Virus record (IMG/VR): IMGVR_UViG_3300042566_001512
Span: 62,001 to 126,000 of that record
DNA length: 64,000 nucleotides
Strand: one strand, 5' to 3'
Shown here piece after piece: positions 2,466 through 39,521 of this stretch. The notes under the pieces are model-generated. The model worked only from the letters and a program-made list of their open reading frames with translations, was not told where the DNA came from and ran no database searches. Both the position numbers and the translations under genes were made by a program. Positions within the stretch are counted from its first letter, which is position 1. The number at the start of each line of letters is the position of its first letter.

Positions 2466-4109
2466 ATGCCTAATATTAGTTTACCACTAGAGGACCTACA
2501 AGACAGCGTAGAAAGGCCCGTTATCTTTTCAGTAGTTAGAGAATTGCTGGAAATAACTGAAATATCCGACAAAACAAACATTTCTTTTTACGACGACGAA
2601 GGTAAATCTGCACAGGTGGGCTCTCTATTAAACGACACTCCGAATAAAACAAACAAATGGCCATTTGACGAAAGGGTCAGAATAGAGGTACAGGAAGACT
2701 TTGACGAAGATTACGCATACAGAATACACACCAAAAAAGCAGAGCACATACCTGTGTTTAAGGACGAGGAACTGGGTGTAATAATAAGACCTATATATTC
2801 TCCTACTAAAGTAAATATAAATTTTACATACAGAGCCAGAGATAGGAATCAGGCAGTTAACTGGAGAAACAATATACGGGCAAAATCGGCAATGTTTAGA
2901 AATATAAATTTGCACGAAATAAGCTATCACTCTCACCTTCAGGAAGAGTTTATAATAATAGTAAAAGAACTGCACCGACTCAGAGAAAATATTGCAGGGT
3001 ACGGAGAAAGCTTTGATACTTACTTTGCCAGCCATTTAAGCGATAAGGCCAGCGTAAAGACTAACCTAGGTGGCAAATCTGTGTTATGGGGCGTAGACGA
3101 GAGACAGATAAGAGTACAGGGGCTGTTTGATTTTGCTGCTGCGCCAGAGAAGGGGGAGAAGAGCGATTCGGCAGATTCCTGGTCGATTTCCTTTTCTTAC
3201 AAATTTGAGTATCAAAAACCTATACTAATGAACATGGTCTACCCCATAGTGGTGCATAACCAGGTATTAAGCAGTAAATTCAGGCCCACCGAAAAGGTTT
3301 ACAGGTTAGAAGATCAAAATAGATCTTTTAGCATGTCCAACAGAGCATATAACGCTTTTGAGTCGGATACCTCTGTACTAACATACAAAGGAAACGACGG
3401 TATATCTATACCTTCTTTTGATGAGTTTGCACCAAAGACTATACTGCCCAGCACAGTAAACGTCATGACGTGCCTAGTAGTGATCGACACGTCAGAAACT
3501 GGCAATCCTAGAAAGCTAATGAATCTAGGTCAGCTAGGAGAAGTTAACTTAAACGGTACCATTCTTGATTTTATAAAGAGATCAGAATATCCTTTCTTGG
3601 GCAAAGATTTTTATTCCATATTCAGTCTATCTCTGTACCGACATGGGGCTCTTTGCGATACCGGCAGCCTTATGGTGGACGAGAACCTTGACATTTATAG
3701 CAATTTGGATTTAGATCTTAGAAGAACTTATAGAATTCGACTGGGATTAGTTACTAATTTTACTTATCTTAGAAAAGAGGCTCTGGATCGAATACGAGCA
3801 TTCAGTGCTACTGCGCCCAGCCTTGGTGATATATTAATAAACTGCATAGATGGCTGCATAGGAAAATACGCCAACCATCCGGACATCGGAAAGGCGGCAA
3901 TGAGTGACGTGGATAGAAAACTTGTATTGGCCAGCCCTATTGCCCAATACGACAGTAGATCAGACAGTACTTTGCCGGGGTATTTACCTAACCTAAAGCT
4001 GCCTGGCAGGAGTACACCTTCCGGACAAATACCCACCTACTACGGTAGAGGAGCAGTCATGTCTAACGTGCAATCCATGTTCGTTAGAGCTAATAGAAAA
4101 GGACATTGA
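2466..4109 (+). CDS. phiKZ-like virion structural protein
   Basis: 547-aa ORF in the structural block; resembles conserved jumbo-phage virion proteins by recollection only. Confidence 0.5.
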   Translation: MPNISLPLEDLQDSVERPVIFSVVRELLEITEISDKTNISFYDDEGKSAQVGSLLNDTPNKTNKWPFDERVRIEVQEDFDEDYAYRIHTKKAEHIPVFKDEELGVIIRPIYSPTKVNINFTYRARDRNQAVNWRNNIRAKSAMFRNINLHEISYHSHLQEEFIIIVKELHRLRENIAGYGESFDTYFASHLSDKASVKTNLGGKSVLWGVDERQIRVQGLFDFAAAPEKGEKSDSADSWSISFSYKFEYQKPILMNMVYPIVVHNQVLSSKFRPTEKVYRLEDQNRSFSMSNRAYNAFESDTSVLTYKGNDGISIPSFDEFAPKTILPSTVNVMTCLVVIDTSETGNPRKLMNLGQLGEVNLNGTILDFIKRSEYPFLGKDFYSIFSLSLYRHGALCDTGSLMVDENLDIYSNLDLDLRRTYRIRLGLVTNFTYLRKEALDRIRAFSATAPSLGDILINCIDGCIGKYANHPDIGKAAMSDVDRKLVLASPIAQYDSRSDSTLPGYLPNLKLPGRSTPSGQIPTYYGRGAVMSNVQSMFVRANRKGH

Positions 4110-22433: not shown

Positions 22434-22476
22434 ATTGAGAGAAAGTAAGTAAGGAGAGAAAGTAAGTAAGTTTAAC

Positions 22477-22552
22477 GGGACGTTAGCTCAGCGGTTAGAG
22501 CAGAGGACTCATAATCCTTTGGTCAGGTGTTCAAATCACCTACGTCCCACCA
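22477..22552 (+). tRNA. trnI-CAU: tRNA with CAU anticodon, most likely tRNA-Ile2 (Met not excluded)
   Basis: Full 76-nt cloverleaf GGGACGT...ACGTCCC-A-CCA with GAGGA-CTCATAA-TCCTT; D and anticodon arms resemble E. coli ileX; TilS gene nearby. Confidence 0.93.
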
Positions 22553-22704
22553 TTTTCATAATACCCAGGAAATAAATTTCCTGGGTATTATGCCTATTAC
22601 TATTTTTTTGCCAGATTATAATTATTTTTAGTAACATATTCTAAATGCGAACAGAAGCAAAAGCGCTTCTATTTCGACAGTAAAATATCAGAAAGGTTCT
22701 AACC

Positions 22705-22950
22705 GTGTCTCTAGTTTGCTCTGGTCAGAGTTTTACCGTATACGTAGATGTCAAAATTGAAGGCATTTGTACTATCCCCAACATTAACATCTACACAAAG
22801 GACCCAAGTATAGATGGCACCAAAGCGGCTTTCCTGAAGAGCATGGAGCAGTTTGCCAACTCTGAGCACTTTGCAAAAATTGTTTATGAGCTTGAGAATG
22901 GCTTTTGTATACATGTAATTCATACCGCTCACCTGGATATGCCAGGTTAA
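22705..22950 (+). CDS. Hypothetical protein
   Basis: GTG start after AAAGG, downstream of a promoter-like motif. Confidence 0.5.
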   Translation: MSLVCSGQSFTVYVDVKIEGICTIPNINIYTKDPSIDGTKAAFLKSMEQFANSEHFAKIVYELENGFCIHVIHTAHLDMPG

Positions 22951-22977
22951 ACAATAGTTTCAATAAAAGGAAAAAAC

Positions 22978-23334
22978 GTGGCCATTAAACCGCAAGACGT
23001 CGACAAATGCTTTGTCGACCTACCATGCATCCCCAGTGTCGATGAGTTGGAAAACTACATTGATAACAAGTTGTGCGATCCATTGTTTTTGAAAAAGTGC
23101 TATCAGCACACCCGGCTTAAACAACCTATCGAGCATACTCAAACGGTAAGTTACGAAATCAGACTGCCTGATGCAACCACGCCAGATTCTAAGACACTGA
23201 AGTTACTAGAGCAACGATACGTGGCAGCCGGATGGAACCAGCTTGCACTCGTATACGGATCGACTGAAAAAGACTTTTACGAAGTTAATCTGGTTCTCAT
23301 TCGGATTGTGGAGCCCGGCAAATACCGTATTTAA
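22978..23334 (+). CDS. Hypothetical protein
   Basis: AAGGA RBS with GTG start; 118 aa. Confidence 0.6.
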   Translation: MAIKPQDVDKCFVDLPCIPSVDELENYIDNKLCDPLFLKKCYQHTRLKQPIEHTQTVSYEIRLPDATTPDSKTLKLLEQRYVAAGWNQLALVYGSTEKDFYEVNLVLIRIVEPGKYRI

Positions 23335-23344
23335 TAGTTAAAGT

Positions 23345-23980
23345 ATGTCAAAAATTCATTTCCTGAGCAAACCCAACAAAGAAATCTATCTTGCGTTCTC
23401 CGGTGGCGTAGACTCGGTTGTTCTGCTACATACACTAATTCGTAGAAATTACAGTGTAGCACTACTTACCGTCGACCACGGTAATGAATTTGCTAAACAA
23501 GAAGTAGAGTTTTGTAAGAAGACCGCAAAGGAATTGGGATTAGAGTACAAGATATTTACTATTCCTGATTTTGATAAATCCACGTCACTTGAGGCGTTTT
23601 GGTCGAATCACAGGAACGACATTTTCCAAAAAATGGACAAGATGGTCGTGAGCGGGCATCATCTGAACGACGCCTGTGAATGGTACCTGATGTCCACTTT
23701 TCAAGGTACGCCAAAGCTTCTAGAGCACACCAACAGGAACGTGCACCGACCAATGATTACCAATACAAAGAAAGTCATCATTGAGTATGCTAATAAATAC
23801 AACTTGACGTACCTGACTGACCCCACTAACGCAGATACTACTTACAATCTAAGAAACAAAGTAAGAGCCGAGCTAATGGGAAGTGTAAAGAGTTGTTTTC
23901 CTGGTATTGAAACTACCGTGAAGAGACTCATCGTTAGAAAATATTTAAATAAAATGAAGTCGGTAGAAAATAGCATTTAA
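23345..23980 (+). CDS. tilS: Minimal tRNA(Ile)-lysidine synthetase (PP-loop domain only)
   Basis: AFSGGVDS PP-loop, VDHG, GHHLND, HRPM, YLTDPTN and RNKVR; 211 aa. Confidence 0.88.
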   Translation: MSKIHFLSKPNKEIYLAFSGGVDSVVLLHTLIRRNYSVALLTVDHGNEFAKQEVEFCKKTAKELGLEYKIFTIPDFDKSTSLEAFWSNHRNDIFQKMDKMVVSGHHLNDACEWYLMSTFQGTPKLLEHTNRNVHRPMITNTKKVIIEYANKYNLTYLTDPTNADTTYNLRNKVRAELMGSVKSCFPGIETTVKRLIVRKYLNKMKSVENSI

Positions 23981-24004
23981 TTTAAATACTATTTTCTTTA
24001 GGAC

Positions 24005-24562
24005 TCGGTGTTGAGGTAAAAAATATCTAGTTCAACATTGTTATGCGAGATAGTAAACGCAGGCACTGTCGTAATAACAGATCACAATAAATGCTCACCA
24101 ATAAAGCGCGGTTAAGTAAGTCACAAGCGAGCTTTATAACCATTACTACGTGTAATCGATTGTATTGCATGAGCGCTTTTTGGATCGTGGACAAATACTG
24201 TTGTGACTATGAAGACGGCATCCCATTTTTAATGGGGCAGCAAGTAATAGTGGAAAATTGTGGAAGTGCTGTCAAAAAACAGTATATAGGGCAACCAATC
24301 CCAGTCCCCGGGTTTAACCGTGCTTTAAAATAAAAAGCTAACTGGGGAACAGCTTGCTGTGTGAATTCTCCTAAAATTGATATGCTAAAAACGTATCAAG
24401 CCAAATACAAAGCAATTTGTAGAGGTAGTGAAATACAATAGGAGAGACCCATCTATACGTAACTAAGATCGGGTTGTAAGTATTTCAAGTCATGCTAGCA
24501 TGACTGTCCCTCTAGTGATAGAGGGTATCCTAATACATATTTAGAAAAGTATGTATTAGGAT
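24005..24562 (+). ncRNA. Candidate structured ncRNA A (~560 nt)
   Basis: Dense nested stems, two probable pseudoknots and a GCAA tetraloop, between tilS and the tRNA-Leu 5' half. Strand is inferred from context. Confidence 0.5.
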
Positions 24563-24569
24563 GCTTTGT

Positions 24570-24598
24570 GCGGGGGTGGTGAAATTGGTAGACACAAC
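24570..24598 (+). pseudogene. 5' half of an interrupted tRNA-Leu (acceptor strand plus D arm)
   Basis: GCGGGGG-TG-GTG-AAATTGGTAGA-CAC-A-AC; pairs 7/7 with the acceptor strand at 25618-25624. Confidence 0.85.
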
Positions 24599-24674
24599 CT
24601 CACTATTTCTTTTTCTATTTGATTTCAATCGCTTATCACTATAATGGTAGTATAAAATAGTGATTGGAGTTAAT

Positions 24675-25226
24675 ATGAAAAATGAATTACAAGAGAAGTG
24701 TAGTGTAAACGATAATGTTGCTTTAGATAAGAAAACTCTTCTGGGGTTATATCCAGAATACACATCTGTTCTTGGTCCCTACTTTAGACCGGACGGAAGA
24801 CAACACGTTATTTTAAATAATGCTAAAGCACCTAAAGGCACTAAAGATAAAACAAAAACTATATCTTACCCTAAGGCACTTAAAGAAGTTGAGTTAAAAG
24901 AAAAATTAAAACCTGATGAAACTGTAGATCATCATGATAGAGATTTTACTAATGACAAATTAAGTAATCTTAAGGTAAAATCTAAATCAATTCACGCGTC
25001 GCAGGATGCGCTTAGAGTTACTGTAAAGCCTATTAATTGTCCAGAATGTTCAAACCTTTTTACGCCTAACGTAAATCAAAGAAACAAACAACATGCCGGT
25101 AAAGGACAAGCTGGTCCTTTTTGTAGTAAAGTGTGTGTCGGTAAATACGGCGCAAGAGTACGAAATGAAGGCGTTATCTTAGAGAGAACGTCATTAGAAA
25201 AAACATATTATCGCATAGATAAGTAA
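24675..25226 (+). CDS. Free-standing HNH homing endonuclease with C-terminal Zn finger
   Basis: ETVDHHDRDFTNDKLSNL...H; CPEC...FCSKVC; GGAG RBS; lower GC. Confidence 0.85.
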   Translation: MKNELQEKCSVNDNVALDKKTLLGLYPEYTSVLGPYFRPDGRQHVILNNAKAPKGTKDKTKTISYPKALKEVELKEKLKPDETVDHHDRDFTNDKLSNLKVKSKSIHASQDALRVTVKPINCPECSNLFTPNVNQRNKQHAGKGQAGPFCSKVCVGKYGARVRNEGVILERTSLEKTYYRIDK

Positions 25227-25234
25227 TAAGCTAT

Positions 25235-25552
25235 CCGACTGTGACGGAACTGGTATACGTAGCAGACTTTGACTAATTTGAGTGCCTTTGAGGAAACTCT
25301 TAGAGTAGAACGCTTCAAATTCGGTGGAACTCCTACTTAACTTATGTTAAGGGACAATACCGAGCCAAGCTTTAGTTGTTAATAAACAACTATCGAAGGT
25401 GTAGAGACTAGACGGGGCGAACCTAATACAAAAGTAATGGTTAAGGTATAGTCCAGACTACAACATTTTTAAAATGGCTTAGGTAACTAAGAGTAGTAAG
25501 AAAATCTGCCGAAGGAAACTTCATGTGGGTTCAAATCCCACCAGTCGGACCA
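25235..25552 (+). tRNA. trnL-UAA: tRNA-Leu(UAA), 87 nt mature, with a group I intron (exons 25235-25269 and 25501-25552)
   Basis: CCGACTG/CAGTCGG-A-CCA acceptor; spliced arm GCAGA-CTT|AAAA-TCTGC; GAAG-GAAA-CTTC variable arm. Confidence 0.93.
25270..25500 (+). mobile_element. Group I intron (tRNA-Leu type, 231 nt, no ORF)
   Basis: P AAATTCGGTGGAA (25317), Q AATACCGAGCC (25356), R GTAGAGACTAGACG (25401), S AAGGTATAGTCC (25443); IGS TTTGAG; terminal G; insertion at U^AA. Confidence 0.92.
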
Positions 25553-25573
25553 ATATATTAAGAAAACAAAACA

Positions 25574-25628
25574 TAAAATCTGTCGGAGAGCAATCTCCAT
25601 ACGGGTTCGATCCCCGTTCCCCGCACCA
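25574..25628 (+). pseudogene. 3' half of the interrupted tRNA-Leu(UAA)
   Basis: TAA-AA-TCTGT, GGAGA-GCAA-TCTCC arm, ACGGG-TTCGATC-CCCGT, TCCCCGC-A-CCA. Confidence 0.88.
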
Positions 25629-25712
25629 TTTAAAAAATCTGATTTTAATTTATTTCAATTATATATTCTAAATGTGAGTAATAACTACTCAAGTTTTAAA
25701 AGGAAACACAAA

Positions 25713-26147
25713 ATGTCTTTCAATGCAAATGTCCTTGTGCAACTCGCTGGTGCTGAGATCAATGACGAATACAGCAGCAATCTCAACAGCATGCCCGTGG
25801 AACTCAAGCAAGCTCTGCAAGAACAACGTGAAGCTGAACGCAAAGCACTGTACGCTGAAGCCGCAAAACTCATCATGGGTATCTTCAAGCGCACCGAAGA
25901 AAAGATTGCCCAAGAAGTGCAAGAGATCCGTGAGGCTCGTCAGCGTGAAGCTAAGGCCAAGGCGCGGATTGCGGATATTGAGCGTGCCAAGCAGTACGCT
26001 GAAGAAACCAACAACTATTTGCCACTGGCTCTGTTGTGCGGAACCATGGTCATCCCTTCCGGAACTGTGAATCGTGAAAAGTTCAGTGTCCCGGTGGAAT
26101 GGAAACCCAAGTCCGAATCGGTCAAAAAAACGCCAGCTAAGAAGTAA
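25713..26147 (+). CDS. Coiled-coil hypothetical protein (144 aa)
   Basis: AAGGA RBS, GC-rich codons, E/R/K-rich helix and basic tail; promoter-like motif at 25660. Confidence 0.8.
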   Translation: MSFNANVLVQLAGAEINDEYSSNLNSMPVELKQALQEQREAERKALYAEAAKLIMGIFKRTEEKIAQEVQEIREARQREAKAKARIADIERAKQYAEETNNYLPLALLCGTMVIPSGTVNREKFSVPVEWKPKSESVKKTPAKK

Positions 26148-27325
26148 GTAGTAGCTAGGTCCAGTCTCGTGAAGGCCGAGACCGATGACGGTGCATAATC
26201 GTCATCGCGACGCTTTAAAACTACTTTGTCAAGGCACTAGCGCCTTTTGATTTATTCAAAAAGCTAGCTTTCATCAATTACATTCTTTAAGAGGTAATTG
26301 ATGGTGGTGTATCATGGATCTGCCAATCAAACCGCTTTTTATTTAGAACGATTTAGAATCATTTAAATTATTACTTTACTTAAATGGTTCTATATATTAC
26401 AATACGTTCCAAAATAATCAGTGGTGCGTAGAACATGCAACACCACGTGAGTAACTGGACTCAAACCAAACTCAGTAAAACTTTCTCTGTAATAGTCCTC
26501 AGGATAGCTGCGAGACAACGAATCCGGCTCTCAGGGGTCGGTGGAGTCACTCTTGAGATAGCAGCGATGAAAAGGAGAAAGTAAAAAAGGCTATATGTGA
26601 AACATCGCCGTGGCACGTATAGATAAACTACACAAGCGGTATAGAAATATACAGCAGCCGGATGCTCCGGTATGGTCAATGTGTAGAATTTGAATCGCCC
26701 TTGTGACGAGTAATCAAATTAATGGCCTATAACTCATAAGCTGCGTTGGTGGTGTAGATGGTATCGTACGCGAAGCTTCTATTGAGTTCAATTCCCTTTC
26801 GTGAGAAAGGGTACCTTTAAATACATTTACCCTAGTGTATTTAAAAGTATTTCAAGAACACACGGCAACACCATGTCGTTAGCTTACACAAACCTCTTAT
26901 GAGTTAGGTGAATGCGGTGCGTCGTAGACCTATACCTAGCCCCAAAACGCTTTTAAACGTCACAAGGTAACGACCTAGGCGGTGGACTTTGATTAAAGCG
27001 AGTATATCAGAGTTTACCGGGTATTAAATGGTGCTCGTCATCAGTTGCAATGACTCAAGCTGTTTTAACTAAAAATAGCTTGGAATAGATTGCAGGTGGA
27101 GAGTCTTTCCCAAGAGACTCATAGAAGCCCAGTGATGCCAACTTAAAGTGTTAAGTTCTAACCTCGCAAACTGATCTGTGGTTATTAAATCAAAAAGGCA
27201 AGCTATTGCCTCGATCAGTAAATAGAAGTAAGTAGCGCTGCTTGCCTGATAAAAATCTTTCTCTAGACTTGGTTGTGCTTGTCGAGTGTTGAGGTTTTTA
27301 TTGGAGAGGTAGTTCCTTTAAACTA
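26148..27325 (+). ncRNA. Candidate large ornate ncRNA B (0.9-1.2 kb)
   Basis: No credible ORF; many stems, GNRA loops and perfect 10-bp long-range helices; TATATTAC at 26393; ends just before tRNA-Arg. Confidence 0.6.
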
Positions 27326-27331
27326 ATAAAT

Positions 27332-27408
27332 CTGTCTGTAGCTCAACTGGATAGAGCAGCTGCCTTCTAAGCAGCAGGTCGGGGGTTCGAGTCCCTCCAG
27401 ACAGGCCA
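27332..27408 (+). tRNA. trnR-UCU: tRNA-Arg(UCU)
   Basis: CTGTCTG/CAGACAG-G-CCA; GCTGC-CTTCTAA-GCAGC; TTCGAGT. Confidence 0.96.
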
Positions 27409-35894: not shown

Positions 35895-36389
35895 ATGAGC
35901 CTTCACAATTTCACTACCACCGAGCTGTTTGCAATTGCAGCCGGTATTACATTTGCACTCATTTGCGCATCCATCCCGGTGATCATTGTAATCTCGAATA
36001 TTGATGAGCCGCGTAGCCCTGTCGACAATAAACTCCGTTTTGACAATTGGTTTGTCAGGAATTTCTTATCTTTGTTCAACAAACAGTGCGGTAATCGCTG
36101 GTACGAATCAAGAGCACTTTTGTATCGCGGCGTTTTCGTATCTCTGCTGTGTACATTTGGCCTGATTGATATCGTGCGATACGAGTTCGAAAGAGAAGGT
36201 CACGATAACTGGTTTGTCTATGAAGTCAAATACTACGTCGGTTTTAGGACCTACAGCAGCCTCCTGAAGAAGACGCAGATCGACATTCCGAAGGTGCAAG
36301 AAAAGACAAAAGAAGCCGGATACTTCTACCAGGTGTTCATAGCTGGACATAACGTCGTGTACGATTACACGGATTCGTGGGGAGAGTAA
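35895..36389 (+). CDS. Membrane-anchored hypothetical protein, paralogue of 29164-29649
   Basis: AAGGA RBS before ATG 35895; long shared peptides. Confidence 0.7.
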   Translation: MSLHNFTTTELFAIAAGITFALICASIPVIIVISNIDEPRSPVDNKLRFDNWFVRNFLSLFNKQCGNRWYESRALLYRGVFVSLLCTFGLIDIVRYEFEREGHDNWFVYEVKYYVGFRTYSSLLKKTQIDIPKVQEKTKEAGYFYQVFIAGHNVVYDYTDSWGE

Positions 36390-36490
36390 AGTAGTGAGCG
36401 TACCAGAGTAACTTTCGTTACTCTGGCGCTACGACTAATTTTTCTTTTTGTTTGAAATCCTGTGTACATTTACTCTATAAAGGAATATTG

Positions 36491-37075
36491 ATGGCAAAAG
36501 AGATTACATGGGACCCTAGGTTTGCTCCTAGTTATACACCTGAGGAAATGCTAAAATTAGGTGTATTTGAGGGCAAGTATATTAACAATATAAAGAGCAT
36601 TCCTGCTAGCTGGAAGAAGATACCAAAGGTGCTAGGTCCTAACGATGAACCAGATCCCACAATCAATAAGTACGGAGTAAAGTCACGGCAAGGACTCTCC
36701 GTATGGAAGAAGAATGGCTGGATAAAAACTGATAAAAATGGTTGGTTTTCTTGGTTTATAAATTATTATTTAGGACGAAGGCTAGGGCAGGAAGATGATT
36801 GGCAAATCGGTAGATGGAACTCTTTCGTAGCCAGACATCAGGGGCAAATAAATGCTGATCCTAAGAGTAAAAATAAAGACCATAGGCTAGCCCAAAAGCA
36901 GGCCTTGCTCCAGTGGGGTGTCGAGTGGAGCACCTCAATGACCTATGAACAGCGTCTTAGAAACGCAAAGCGTGTTGCTAAGTTGGCAGGTGTTTCGCTA
37001 GGCGAAGTCCTTGATAAGAAATCTATTTCTCAAGAAACTATTGTTATTGTTCCAAAATACACTGAATGGTTATAA
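36491..37075 (+). CDS. Conserved uncharacterised protein, probably head-packaged
   Basis: AAGGA RBS; TPEEMLKLGVF, GWFSWFINYYLGRR, QIGRW; ends SQE...PKYTEWL. Confidence 0.75.
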   Translation: MAKEITWDPRFAPSYTPEEMLKLGVFEGKYINNIKSIPASWKKIPKVLGPNDEPDPTINKYGVKSRQGLSVWKKNGWIKTDKNGWFSWFINYYLGRRLGQEDDWQIGRWNSFVARHQGQINADPKSKNKDHRLAQKQALLQWGVEWSTSMTYEQRLRNAKRVAKLAGVSLGEVLDKKSISQETIVIVPKYTEWL

Positions 37076-38426
37076 ATAATACCACGAATAATATTCGTGG
37101 TATTATGCTGTTACTTGTTTTTGTATTAATAAACAACTACATATTACTTATTTGATTTAACTTTAAATAGATGTAACATGTTAAAAGACACTTTTTTAAA
37201 TAAGCTAAAAGAAAATAACCTTACTCATCTTGAAAAATATGATTATTCCCTAGTACCAAATGAGTTTACCACTACCAGATATAGTAATAAAATTAAGATA
37301 ATTTGCCCTGAACACGGTATATTTGAACAAAATACACGCGCTCACCTGGCTGGCGCTGATTGCAGGCTATGTATAAGAAAACGCATTACCGATACCGCCG
37401 AGTCGTTTATTACCAAAGCCAAAATAAAACACGCTAACCGTTACGATTACTCTAAAGTCATTTATAAAAACAGTTCAACACATGTAATTATTGTTTGTCC
37501 TAAACATGGCGCGTTCATTCAGGTTCCAGGTGCCCACTTAAGCGGTAAAGGGTGTGCGGAGTGCGGAAAAGAAATTATGATGAGTAAGCTTAAGTCAACT
37601 AATGAGGAATTTATTTCAAAGGCCAAATCAAAGCACAGTGATAAATATAGTTATGATCTTGTAGACTATAAAAATAATGTTAAAAAGATAACTATTACTT
37701 GTCCCGATCATGGTAACTTTTTACAGATACCATCTGATCATTTAAGCGGTAGAGGTTGCCCGCAGTGTGCAAAAAATAGTTTTGCAGCTAAAATGAAATA
37801 CACCAATCAAGATTTTATAGAAAAAGCAAATTGTAAACATAATTTTAAATACGCTTATAATAAAGTAAACTATATAAACGACAAAATCAAAGTAATAATT
37901 TCTTGCCCAGTAAGAAACCACGGGGATTTTAGTCAAGTGCCTAATCAGCACCTGCATGGTCAGGGTTGCCCAAAGTGTAGAGAATCTTTTGGTGAAAGGT
38001 TTATTTCTCAAATTTTAGATAACTATAAAATCGATTATAAAAGAGAATATAAAATAAATGGATATAAGTACAAGTATGATTTTTACTTACCTAAATACGA
38101 TATCTATATTGAATATCATGGTAGACAGCACTATCACGCGATTAAGTATTTTGGTGGCGTTAAAGCCTTAAAATATATAAAAAGAAACGATAAAATAAAA
38201 GAAGAATTAATAAAGCGATCAACTGGAATGTTAATAGTTATTAAACACACGTTCAACACTTTTGGAAAAATCGAAGATGAGATACTAAGATTAATATCAG
38301 TAATACATCCTCCGTTTTTAAGTGATTTAAGCACGCTAGGGGCTTCTGTTGCTAATTCAAAAATATATTTAATTAATAATGGAATTGTGTATTTTAGAAA
38401 ATAATTTAATCCTTGCTCCAGTGGGG
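36903..38426 (+). mobile_element. Endonuclease element flanked by 16-bp direct repeats, carrying a replacement 3' end of its target gene
   Basis: CCTTGCTCCAGTGGGG at 36903 and 38411; homologous C-termini follow both copies. Confidence 0.7.
37178..38404 (+). CDS. Putative homing endonuclease with Zn-ribbon repeats and a PD-(D/E)XK/Vsr-like domain
   Basis: Four 'I.CP.HG.F.Q....HL.G.GC..C' repeats; ESFGE...YDFYLPKYDIYIEYHGRQHY. Confidence 0.8.
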   Translation: MLKDTFLNKLKENNLTHLEKYDYSLVPNEFTTTRYSNKIKIICPEHGIFEQNTRAHLAGADCRLCIRKRITDTAESFITKAKIKHANRYDYSKVIYKNSSTHVIIVCPKHGAFIQVPGAHLSGKGCAECGKEIMMSKLKSTNEEFISKAKSKHSDKYSYDLVDYKNNVKKITITCPDHGNFLQIPSDHLSGRGCPQCAKNSFAAKMKYTNQDFIEKANCKHNFKYAYNKVNYINDKIKVIISCPVRNHGDFSQVPNQHLHGQGCPKCRESFGERFISQILDNYKIDYKREYKINGYKYKYDFYLPKYDIYIEYHGRQHYHAIKYFGGVKALKYIKRNDKIKEELIKRSTGMLIVIKHTFNTFGKIEDEILRLISVIHPPFLSDLSTLGASVANSKIYLINNGIVYFRK

Positions 38427-38580
38427 ATGGGATTGGAAAGATTCTTTCACAGATGAACAGCTAGAAAAAAATGCTAAAAGAATATCTAAAATAGCAAATG
38501 TTACTTTGGATACTAAAACAGACAAGCTAGCAGTGGCAAAAGAATCATCTATAATTCTACCTAGTTATTTTAACTGGTAA
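38411..38580 (+). pseudogene. Orphaned alternative 3' end of the 36491-37075 gene
   Basis: LLQWGWDWKDSFTDEQLEKNAKRISKIANVTLDTKTDKLAVAKESSIILPSYFNW* aligns to the current C-terminus. Confidence 0.8.
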
Positions 38581-38678
38581 TTACTTATCATAAATGGACA
38601 GTGCTACACTGTCCATTTATGCCTTCCTATTAAAATACAACAACATATAACTTGTATGTAACAAAAGACGGATAAGTC

Positions 38679-39062
38679 ATGTCTACTACTTTTAAATGGG
38701 CCAGACGAGCTAATCCTGGCTATGAGGTATCTAGCAAGGGCGATATTAGATTCTCTGCTTTTTATGCTATTCTTCCAAATGCAAACAGCATAGAGTGGAC
38801 TTACCAGACTCAAGTAAAAGGCTATCCCAGTATTCGTGAGGGCAAAGGTAAACCCCCGTTAGATAAAACCGTTGACCTGTGGAAAGAATATTTGCAATTA
38901 TGGAGAATCTGGGCAAACAGCAACATACCGCTAATGAGAGAACTATACAAGTCGGCATCGGCCAACGGATACACACTAACCGACATGTTTGCCACATCTG
39001 AGGTAAATCAGGCCAGAGCACTAGCTACAGTCCTCAATGAGCTGTGCGGATACACGTCTTAG
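38679..39062 (+). CDS. Conserved phage hypothetical protein
   Basis: YEVSSKGDIRFSAF...NQARALA. Confidence 0.7.
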   Translation: MSTTFKWARRANPGYEVSSKGDIRFSAFYAILPNANSIEWTYQTQVKGYPSIREGKGKPPLDKTVDLWKEYLQLWRIWANSNIPLMRELYKSASANGYTLTDMFATSEVNQARALATVLNELCGYTS

Positions 39063-39077
39063 TAAAAAGGAATTAAA

Positions 39078-39521
39078 ATGTATTTACAGACTGATTTTTG
39101 GTCAAACGTAAAGATTCGGTTTGACCATATTCTTTTTATTGATAATAGAGACAAAAGCGTAATTTTCCAAGTGTCTTTGAATCACAATAGACTTGATATT
39201 AAGTGCTTCTTTAGAAAAGTAATAAAATACAGCCTCAAAGAAAGAAACGAGAACGCGCAGTTTGCCGTAATTCATAATGGCGAAATTATGCCCATTTGCT
39301 GGTTTGATTTGGTACTTGATAACGCGGATGTAATCGGTAGAGACTTTGCATTTGGTACAAATTTGATACGGCTAAACGGAGTCATTGTGCCTCTTGGTAA
39401 TTTCCCTCCATTTGGTGAGAAAAAGGGAATGTCGTCTAAAAGATATTTGTATCTGTGGTCTAGTAACCGAAAATACAAAGTATTTAAGAGAGCGATCAAG
39501 TTCATAGCTAACAGGGTATAA
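39078..39521 (+). CDS. Hypothetical protein
   Basis: AAGGA RBS; 147 aa. Confidence 0.6.
   Translation: MYLQTDFWSNVKIRFDHILFIDNRDKSVIFQVSLNHNRLDIKCFFRKVIKYSLKERNENAQFAVIHNGEIMPICWFDLVLDNADVIGRDFAFGTNLIRLNGVIVPLGNFPPFGEKKGMSSKRYLYLWSSNRKYKVFKRAIKFIANRV

What the first reader, a model, noticed from the sequence alone, without database searches (positions are those of the whole stretch)
36491..38580. Second insert-and-replace element: endonuclease brings a new 3' end for the gene it interrupts
Seen: CCTTGCTCCAGTGGGG occurs at 36903 and 38411. After copy 1 the gene ends VEWSTSMTYEQRLRNAKRVAKLAG...PKYTEWL*; after copy 2 an orphan homologous end reads WDWKDSFTDEQLEKNAKRISKIAN...PSYFNW*. Between them are a hairpin, a promoter-like motif and a Zn-ribbon/PD-(D/E)XK nuclease. 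The logic matches the tRNA-Leu cassette but uses a different nuclease family and a protein-coding target. Inference: intron-free invasion of a gene by co-delivery of a cleavage-resistant replacement.
Basis: partly seen in the sequence, partly recalled or inferred. Interest (0 to 1): 0.75.

Follow-up and report, generated by a model that had tools for sequence, protein, structure and literature searches.

The report
Phage homing nuclease that replaces a gene's end
A selfish nuclease gene in a lake-water jumbo phage has inserted into a conserved phage gene and supplies a substitute 3' end, leaving the original end stranded downstream; this trick is known from fungal mitochondria, and my searches found no report of it in phages.

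Summary
The 16-mer occurs only at 36903 and 38411. A 194-aa gene ends in frame after copy 1. A 55-codon homologous but orphaned end follows copy 2. Between them lie a terminator hairpin, a phiKZ-type promoter motif and a 408-aa nuclease.

The nuclease has four DUF723 zinc ribbons and a Vsr-like catalytic domain. Its best structural match is the homing endonuclease I-Bth0305I.

- The same gene–nuclease–orphan layout occurs in two other phage genomes, with the same right-hand junction but different orphans.
- The three in-frame ends form a supported clade.
- One relative's orphan matches the working ends of its nuclease-free relatives.
- A contig from an independent freshwater sample joins the 14 bases before copy 1, through the 16-mer, to the orphan end without a mismatch. 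This is the predicted empty allele.

Cleavage resistance of the new junction is inferred, not shown. It is backed indirectly: the otherwise invariant LLQWGWD motif is altered in 18 of 34 close relatives and in 0 of 86 distant ones.

The architecture matches the mobile-ORF "gene hybrids" of fungal mitochondria (Allomyces atp6), so it is a new variant of a known kind. Interest is moderate.

The parts
36491..36902 (+). 5' part ('head', residues 1-137) of the invaded gene X. X is a conserved hypothetical protein of phiKZ-like jumbo phages.
   Evidence: ORF list. 285 homologues, mostly 170-200 aa and on contigs up to 300 kb. No Pfam, PHROG or PDB match. Annotated as hypothetical in Vibrio jumbo phages.
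36903..36918 (+). 16-mer copy 1: the left junction, encoding (A)LLQWG of the family's conserved motif.
   Evidence: In run X2 the contig graph branches exactly after 36918 into a nuclease-bearing path and an empty path.
36919..37075 (+). In-frame replacement 3' end ('tail A', VEWS...TEWL-stop), associated with the nuclease.
   Evidence: Its best matches are the in-frame ends of the two other nuclease-carrying loci (65% aa). The three form a clade with 96/87 support.
37076..37106 (+). Terminator-like hairpin closing the rebuilt gene.
   Evidence: Homologous hairpins sit at the same place in L006 and L007.
37120..37148 (+). phiKZ-type promoter-like motif (TTTGTAT...ACATATTACT) upstream of the nuclease gene.
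   Evidence: The phiKZ consensus TATATTAC is quoted in PMC7058600. This stretch is 85-92% identical among the three carriers. Promoter function is inferred.
37178..38404 (+). Free-standing homing endonuclease gene (408 aa). It has four DUF723 C-H-C-C zinc-ribbon repeats (about 37265-37987) and a Vsr-like/EDxHD catalytic domain (about 37988-38332).
   Evidence: Pfam DUF723 and PHROG 559/681/9084. The fold matches I-Bth0305I (3r3p) and Vsr. E273, D301, H318 and D338 are conserved. GC is 31.7% against about 40-44% in the flanks.
38411..38426 (+). 16-mer copy 2: the right junction, 6 bases after the nuclease stop codon.
   Evidence: Identity between carriers falls from 90-100% to 40-60% from this point on.
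38427..38580 (+). Orphaned native 3' end of gene X. It is still an intact reading frame but has no plausible start.
   Evidence: In run X2 a contig joins it directly to the head, with 0 mismatches over 246 bases.
38589..38621 (+). Native terminator hairpin of gene X, now downstream of the nuclease gene.
38640..38652 (+). Promoter-like motif of the next gene (38679-39062, phrog_9995). It marks the undisturbed right flank.

Best explanation
A free-standing homing endonuclease gene has invaded gene X of a phiKZ-like jumbo phage. It is Vsr-like (EDxHD-type) with four DUF723 zinc-ribbon DNA-binding repeats, and it travels with a substitute 3' end of X, a terminator and a phage promoter. Proposed steps: (1) during co-infection the nuclease cuts nuclease-free X alleles in or near the conserved LLQWGWD-coding site. 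(2) The break is repaired from the carrier genome. The left end pairs anywhere in the X head. The right end pairs only with the roughly 16-22 conserved bases that sit just after the nuclease stop codon. (3) The recipient's own 3' end is pushed downstream as an orphan, and X is completed by the imported end. (4) The rebuilt junction and the truncated orphan site each keep only one flank of the original site, or carry substitutions, and so escape re-cutting. Shown here: the anatomy, its recurrence in two other genomes, the foreign origin of the in-frame end, the native origin of the orphan, and the existence of the empty allele. Inferred: nuclease activity, the position of the cut, the repair pathway and the resistance.
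For: The same layout occurs in L006 (nuclease 87% aa identical) and L007/L008 (71%), each with an orphan directly after the nuclease gene. The right junction is shared and sharp, while the left border is gradual, as expected for homologous repair. All three orphans are intact frames of three different types. The L006 orphan is 77-83% identical to the functional ends of its nearest nuclease-free relatives, against 51-63% for its in-frame end. The in-frame ends of carriers form a clade (96/87) whereas the heads do not in any bootstrap tree. In run X2, from a different sample and study, one contig starts with the 14 bases that precede copy 1 and continues through the 16-mer into the orphan with no mismatch. 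A second contig follows the nuclease-bearing path. The 16-base repeat is shorter than the contigs' 30-base overlaps, which I take as k-1 of the assembler's word length (assumed k = 31, from those overlaps and my own knowledge of Logan, not stated by the tool), so the junction word should come from real reads. The catalytic domain matches I-Bth0305I (TM 0.79 by target) and Vsr, and keeps the E, D, H, D residues. The three orphans keep CAGTGGGG(A/G)TGGGA, whereas all nine intact close alleles examined differ there. The motif is non-canonical in 18 of 34 close proteins and in 0 of 86 distant ones.
Against: No cleavage data exist. The in-frame copy in this window retains the full 16-mer, so resistance would have to come from the changed 3' flank alone. 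The replacement end is only 72-82% identical in DNA between carriers, no higher than the head, while the nuclease 3' half is 97-100% identical. The end and the nuclease have therefore partly separate histories. The AU test does not reject carrier heads forming one clade (p 0.13). The orphan's GC (30.5%) resembles the nuclease (31.7%) rather than the head (40.5%), which is unexplained. The empty allele rests on one 260-base contig at depth about 7.5, and it could equally be a secondary deletion through the 16-base repeat. The motif enrichment is not corrected for relatedness.
Confidence: 0.78

Rival explanations
1. Inverse cassette: the nuclease arrived together with the downstream orphan, a piece of its previous host's gene X, and inserted just after the stop codon of an intact native gene. 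On this reading the in-frame end is native and the orphan is foreign.
For: The GC of the orphan (30.5%) matches the nuclease (31.7%) and not the head or in-frame end (about 40%).
Against: Identity between carriers is 97-100% up to the nuclease stop and collapses exactly at copy 2. The three orphans are only 42-50% identical to one another, and the L006 orphan matches local nuclease-free relatives. The X2 contig uses the orphan as the gene's real end. The in-frame ends, not the orphans, cluster across carriers.
Confidence: 0.05
2. Old tandem duplication: the 3' end of X duplicated in an ancestor, the nuclease later landed between the copies, and everything has since been inherited vertically. 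The X2 'empty' form would then be a secondary deletion through the 16-base repeat.
For: The replacement end has diverged between carriers about as much as the head. The AU test cannot reject carriers forming one clade. A deletion between direct repeats would give exactly the X2 junction.
Against: The L006 orphan is much closer to the functional ends of other genomes than to the other orphans, and the L007 orphan pairs with P0034 (98/85). Neither fits vertical descent of one duplicated copy. All orphans are still open frames that keep the family consensus. The window's orphan is 100% identical to the X2 working end. Nuclease-free genomes are interleaved with carriers in the head tree.
Confidence: 0.1
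3. Intron or intein: the insert is spliced out at RNA or protein level so that the orphan end is the one actually used.
For: Relatives of this nuclease family are often intron- or intein-borne (PMC3239194). Enterococcus phage relatives are annotated as intron-associated.
Against: No Rfam intron family matches even at E up to 1. The gene continues in frame for 52 homologous codons to a stop, followed by a terminator. The nuclease is a separate ORF in another frame with its own promoter motif.
Confidence: 0.03
4. Domesticated or competitive role: the nuclease is kept because it damages co-infecting nuclease-free relatives, and the duplicated end is only a by-product.
For: An intron endonuclease of the phiKZ-like phage PhiPA3 was shown to interfere with a co-infecting relative (PMC11620839, listed). 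The nuclease ORF is intact with all catalytic residues. The target motif is diversified in the clade.
Against: This is compatible with the main explanation rather than opposed to it. Nothing here measures fitness.
Confidence: 0.3

Closest known systems
Mobile-ORF 'gene hybrids' of fungal mitochondria: Allomyces macrogynus atp6; Glomus atp6, atp9, cox2 and nad3; Rhizopus atp9; Mortierella cox2
   Same: An endonuclease ORF sits behind a foreign, in-frame C-terminal coding segment, and the native C-terminus survives downstream as a duplicate. The native copy is closer to insert-free relatives than the inserted copy is (PMC3630166).
   Different: The host is a jumbo bacteriophage, not an organelle. 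The nuclease is Vsr-like/EDxHD with zinc-ribbon repeats, not LAGLIDADG or GIY-YIG. The nuclease is not fused in phase to the gene; it is separated from it by a terminator and has a phage promoter motif. An empty allele coexists in a natural population.
I-Bth0305I and the EDxHD family of homing endonucleases
   Same: The catalytic domain has the Vsr-like fold and the E, D, H, D residues are conserved. It occurs in phages and has a multidomain architecture with a separate DNA-binding region. The family includes free-standing members (PMC3239194).
   Different: There is no sequence-level match to the PDB entry. The DNA-binding part is four DUF723 zinc ribbons. The gene is free-standing, not intron-borne. 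The target, cut pattern and oligomeric state are unknown.
Free-standing T4-type homing endonucleases (SegF, SegG, MobE): 'intronless homing' with co-conversion of flanking markers
   Same: It is a stand-alone nuclease gene with its own promoter next to a conserved gene. It is expected to spread by break repair in mixed infections, with mosaic patches beside it (own knowledge; the SegF reference is listed).
   Different: In those cases the neighbouring gene's sequence is simply converted. Here the native end is retained as a duplicate, because the right-hand homology is only the short conserved site.
Genes in pieces created by nuclease insertion (Aeh1 nrdA split by mobE; split gp43 in T4-related phages)
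   Same: A homing endonuclease gene sits inside a conserved phage coding region without an intron (the references are quoted in PMC8351571).
   Different: Those genes are split into two complementary polypeptides. Here the gene stays whole because a substitute end is supplied.
Integrase-driven elements that rebuild the 3' end of their target (e14 and phage 21 in icd; tRNA-targeting islands)
   Same: The logic is insert-and-replace with a displaced native 3' end (own knowledge).
   Different: The insert holds no recombinase or attachment-site system, only the nuclease ORF.

Membership tests
EDxHD / Vsr-like homing endonucleases (prototype I-Bth0305I) | Catalytic domain with the Vsr endonuclease fold | tested here: met
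   The AlphaFold model of residues 256-408 has pLDDT above 90 over its core. Its best PDB matches are 3r3p, the I-Bth0305I catalytic domain (probability 1.0, TM 0.79 by target), then Vsr 1cw0 and 1vsr.
EDxHD / Vsr-like homing endonucleases (prototype I-Bth0305I) | Conserved composite catalytic residues E, D, H, D | tested here: met
   In the 41-sequence alignment A2, E18, E57, H63 and D83 are invariant and D46 is at least 90% conserved. These correspond to E273, D301, E312, H318 and D338 in the protein. Mapping them onto the published motif is by position in the fold, not by a residue-level superposition.
EDxHD / Vsr-like homing endonucleases (prototype I-Bth0305I) | Detectable sequence homology to characterised members | tested here: not met
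   phmmer against all PDB chains gave no match at E up to 1. The relationship is visible only at fold level.
EDxHD / Vsr-like homing endonucleases (prototype I-Bth0305I) | Cuts the insert-free allele next to the insertion point and not the occupied allele | not testable with these tools
   This needs a cleavage assay. The only indirect support is the altered site in intact alleles.
Mitochondrial-type mobile ORF with C-terminal replacement (Allomyces atp6 type) | Endonuclease ORF preceded by an in-frame C-terminal segment and followed by a duplicated C-terminus | tested here: met
   for the window; for L006 and L007.
Mitochondrial-type mobile ORF with C-terminal replacement (Allomyces atp6 type) | The downstream copy is native (matches insert-free relatives) and the in-frame copy is foreign | tested here: met
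   L006: orphan 77-83% against in-frame 51-63% to its closest relatives. Window: the empty-allele contig in X2 uses the orphan with 0 mismatches. The in-frame ends form a clade. Against database relatives alone, the window's two ends are about equally distant.
Mitochondrial-type mobile ORF with C-terminal replacement (Allomyces atp6 type) | The endonuclease drives mobility of the element | not testable with these tools
   This is inferred from the element's presence in three non-sister genomes with one shared right junction.
Group I intron- or intein-borne homing endonuclease | A self-splicing RNA or protein element surrounds the nuclease ORF | tested here: not met
   No intron family matches at E up to 1. 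The nuclease ORF is in a different frame and is separated from the gene by a stop codon and a terminator.
Free-standing phage homing endonucleases (intronless homing) | Stand-alone ORF with its own expression signals beside a conserved target gene, and absent from close relatives | tested here: met
   Promoter-like motif and separate ORF. The nuclease is absent from L004, L005, L059 and L061 and from 38 distant loci.
Integrase-type insert-and-replace elements | A site-specific recombinase encoded in the element | tested here: not met
   Apart from five short, unscanned reverse-strand ORFs of 31-89 aa, the only ORF of 30 aa or more wholly between the repeats is the nuclease, plus a 37-aa ORF nested inside it. 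Only the nuclease was scanned, and it shows no recombinase family.

The most novel reading that the evidence does not exclude
Repeated rounds of nuclease-driven end replacement and target-site escape may be the main engine diversifying the C-terminal third of this otherwise conserved jumbo-phage protein. The nuclease would force amino-acid changes (Q to N, WD to VE/VQ/VL/VR) in a motif that is invariant elsewhere. The orphan ends, still intact, would act as a reservoir that can be restored by deletion through the short repeat. In this way a selfish gene would shape adaptive protein evolution and allele turnover in natural phage populations.
Probability: 0.3. Interest if true: 0.7.

Novelty: new variant of a known kind. 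Interest (0 to 1): 0.55.

Why it matters
The finding shows a way for a homing endonuclease to colonise a conserved protein-coding gene without an intron, an intein or a split gene. It carries a spare gene end and needs only about 20 bases of homology on one side. The layout is documented in fungal mitochondria, and four literature searches here found no phage example. Filled and empty alleles coexist in a natural sample, and the target motif has changed only in the clade where the nuclease circulates. This makes an arms race between a selfish nuclease and its target directly testable. On the practical side, stranded gene ends of this kind can confuse phage annotation and pangenome clustering. 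Assemblies also break at such polymorphic sites.

Tried and rejected
- **Inverse model (orphan travels with the nuclease).** The low GC of the orphan suggested this. I rejected it because identity between carriers collapses exactly at copy 2 and the orphans differ between genomes.
- **Group I intron.** No Rfam match.
- **Second paralogue.** The whole virus record holds only the gene and the orphan.
- **Close phage relatives by DNA.** megablast found none. blastn found only a 58-base patch of the nuclease in Enterococcus phages.
- **Empty junction or orphan sequence in other collections.** Exact searches of JGI metagenome contigs and IMG/VR found nothing.
- **Nuclease relatives in IMG/VR.** They are only 38-45% identical and are not next to gene X.
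- **Function of gene X.** No Pfam, PHROG, PDB sequence or PDB fold match. AlphaFold DB matches are unnamed clusters. Atlas hits score below 0.75. The function remains unknown.
- **Pseudopalindromic cut site like that of I-Bth0305I.** I found none convincing around the junction.
- **Head-versus-tail incongruence.** The tail clade is supported, but the AU test on heads is not significant (p 0.13).
- **Phage precedent in the literature.** Four searches found none.
- **Complex prediction of nuclease with DNA.** I did not run it, judging that it would not discriminate between the junctions.
Full report
**Source and setting.** The window is bases 62001-126000 of a 208.8 kb IMG/VR virus record, estimated 76% complete. 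Its best DNA holder is a lake-water metagenome. Relatives of the invaded gene lie on contigs of 180-300 kb. One of these has phiKZ internal-protein domains next door. Cultured homologues are in Vibrio jumbo phages such as pVa-21 and BONAISHI, all annotated as hypothetical. I therefore treat the genome as a phiKZ-like jumbo phage.

**Checking the observation.**
- The 16-mer is present at 36903 and 38411 and nowhere else, even with two mismatches allowed; 0.02 matches are expected by chance.
- Gene X (36491-37075, 194 aa) runs through copy 1.
- A 55-codon open stretch (38413-38580) follows copy 2. It aligns without gaps to residues 139-193 of X at 44% identity.
- DNA identity between the two ends beyond the repeat is only 83 of about 155 bases. 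The exact 16-base match is therefore a junction, not general similarity.
- Terminator-like hairpins follow each end, at 37076-37106 and 38589-38621.
- The motif ACTACATATTACT at 37136 resembles the phiKZ promoter TATATTAC (PMC7058600). A sister motif at 38640 precedes the next gene. There are six such motifs in the window against 1.5 expected.
- The genome holds no other copy of X.

**The nuclease.**
- The 408-aa ORF (37178-38404) has four repeats of a C-H-C-C zinc ribbon (Pfam DUF723). It matches PHROG families annotated as homing, HNH or intron-encoded endonucleases.
- DUF723/CapR repeats are predicted zinc-finger DNA-binding modules of phage homing endonucleases (PMC10055350).
- I built a 41-sequence alignment of the C-terminal domain and modelled it; core pLDDT is above 90.
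- The best PDB matches are the catalytic domain of I-Bth0305I (3r3p, TM 0.79 by target), followed by Vsr.
- The conserved residues E273, D301, H318 and D338 fit the composite EDxHD motif of that family.
- There is no sequence-level PDB match, so membership is at fold and motif level only.
- GC is 31.7% against about 40-44% in the flanking genes.

**Recurrence in other genomes.**
- Two of the closest X homologues are followed by the same nuclease. These are P0002 on locus L006 (nuclease 87% identical) and P0022 on loci L007/L008, a 223 kb NCBI assembly (71% identical, one zinc ribbon fewer).
- In both, a homologous orphan end starts directly after the nuclease gene.
- All three orphans are uninterrupted frames that end at the family's terminal tryptophan.
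- Four other close relatives (L004, L005, L059, L061) and 38 distant IMG/VR loci have neither nuclease nor orphan.

**Borders of the mobile part.**
- In a three-way DNA alignment, identity between the window and L006 is 70-87% in the head.
- It falls to about 50% in the 40 bases after copy 1.
- It is 72-80% in the rest of the in-frame end and 67-68% in the hairpin.
- It is 85-93% from the promoter motif onward and 97-100% in the 3' half of the nuclease.
- It drops abruptly to 40-60% from copy 2 onward.
- The right junction, the nuclease stop followed by 6-7 bases and then the conserved site, is the same in all three genomes.
- I read this as one founding illegitimate join, followed by spread through homologous repair. 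In that repair the right-hand homology is little more than the conserved site.

**Which end is native.**
- The L006 orphan is 77-83% identical to the functional ends of L006's nearest nuclease-free relatives. Its in-frame end is only 51-63% identical to them.
- The in-frame ends of the three carriers are each other's best matches. They form a clade with 96/87 support in a tree of 39 ends. The orphans scatter, and the L007 orphan pairs with P0034 at 98/85.
- In the head tree the carriers are not a clade in any bootstrap replicate. However, the AU test does not reject one (p 0.13), so the incongruence is suggestive only.

**The empty allele.**
- I laid contigs of four runs on 36000-39200. Run X2, a freshwater metagenome from another study, carries this phage nearly unchanged.
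- One 260-base contig begins with AGCCCAAAAGCAGG, exactly bases 36889-36902. It continues through the 16-mer into 38427-38656 with no mismatch.
- Another contig follows 36889-37198 into the nuclease-bearing path.
- Consecutive contigs overlap by 30 bases, which I take as k-1 of the assembler's word length (assumed k = 31, not stated by the tool). The repeat is only 16 bases, so the joining word should exist in reads rather than arise from the contig graph.
- It cannot be told from these data whether it is ancestral or a deletion through the repeat. Either way, the orphan is a usable, undecayed end.

**Signs of a conflict at the site.**
- The three orphans keep CAGTGGGG(A/G)TGGGA, coding QWGWD/E.
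- All nine intact alleles examined in the close clade differ there. They carry CAG to AAC (Q to N), or TGGGA to GTCGA, GTCCA and similar (WD to VE, VQ, VL, VR).
- Among proteins, the motif is non-canonical in 18 of 34 close homologues and in 0 of 86 distant ones (Fisher 2e-12, not corrected for relatedness).
- L059 and L058 lack the nuclease yet carry the same variant patches as the in-frame copies of L006 and L007. This is what partial co-conversion or selection for escape would give.
- This supports, but does not prove, that the nuclease recognises this site and that the variants are resistant.

**Comparison with known systems.** The architecture is that of the mobile-ORF gene hybrids of fungal mitochondria. 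These were first described for Allomyces atp6 and later for Glomus atp6, atp9, cox2 and nad3. In them an endonuclease ORF carries a foreign C-terminus and the native one persists downstream (PMC3630166). The case here differs in four ways: the host is a phage, the nuclease family is different, the gene and the nuclease are separated by a terminator and a promoter, and an empty allele is present in the population. It shares the free-standing lifestyle of T4 Seg and Mob genes. It contrasts with genes split by nuclease insertion. Four literature searches found no phage example. That is absence from one library, not proof of novelty.

**Open points.**
- The orphan's low GC is unexplained.
- The function of gene X is unknown.
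- The cut site and the resistance of the new junction are untested.

**Verdict.** The finding is a new variant of a known kind, of moderate interest.

Noticed in passing
L044:2500-4041: A distant relative has a different insertion in the same gene. A 91-aa 5' fragment of X (2500-2775) is followed by a 220-aa ORF with an HNH-like C-terminal motif (2831-3493; Pfam gives only a weak HTH_psq hit). A second, nearly full-length X copy follows, with a frame break near residue 45. This may be a mirror-image event with a duplicated 5' end.
   Followed up: partly
P0053, and P0008, P0013, P0014, P0017, P0026, P0031, P0037, P0045: Some X homologues are 306-334 aa long because of an N-terminal extension. 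In P0053 the extension holds an HNH_3 endonuclease domain. In the others tested (P0008, P0013, P0037) Pfam finds no family. Gene X seems to attract nucleases at its 5' side as well.
   Followed up: partly
window 22437-27408: No tRNA-Leu is detected anywhere in the window; there is only tRNA-Met (22477-22552) and tRNA-Arg (27332-27408). Between them lies an HNH endonuclease ORF (24660-25226, phrog_14913). An ORF at 23345-23980 matches only the middle of QueC-like/PAPS-reductase profiles and may be a gene fragment. A 17-base unit GAGAGAAAGTAAGTAAG is repeated in tandem just before tRNA-Met.
   Followed up: partly
window 20996, 21824, 22603, 25630: A 47-base direct-repeat family ending in ACATATTCTAAATG occurs four times in intergenic positions. 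It looks like a second promoter class, distinct from the ACATATTACT motif next to the nuclease.
   Followed up: no
L007:4688-5758 versus window 37330-37500: The nuclease in L007 is 356 aa and lacks one zinc-ribbon repeat, leaving an alignment gap of about 170 bases. This fits recombination between the repeated DNA-binding modules, as described for other phage homing endonucleases (PMC10055350).
   Followed up: partly
L058 and L060 (contig ends): Two contigs carrying close X homologues end 66-68 bases after the stop codon of X. Assemblies may be breaking at this polymorphic, nuclease-present-or-absent site.
   Followed up: no
window 38427-38580: The orphan end has 30.5% GC against 40.5% for the head of the same gene, although the X2 contig shows it to be the gene's working end in the empty allele. 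It may itself be the product of an earlier replacement.
   Followed up: partly
window 36919-36960: The first 40 bases after copy 1 (VEWSTSMTYEQ) are only about 50% identical to the other two carriers. They resemble the nuclease-free L005 (LLNWGVEWSAPL) more closely, so the in-frame end is itself a mosaic.
   Followed up: partly
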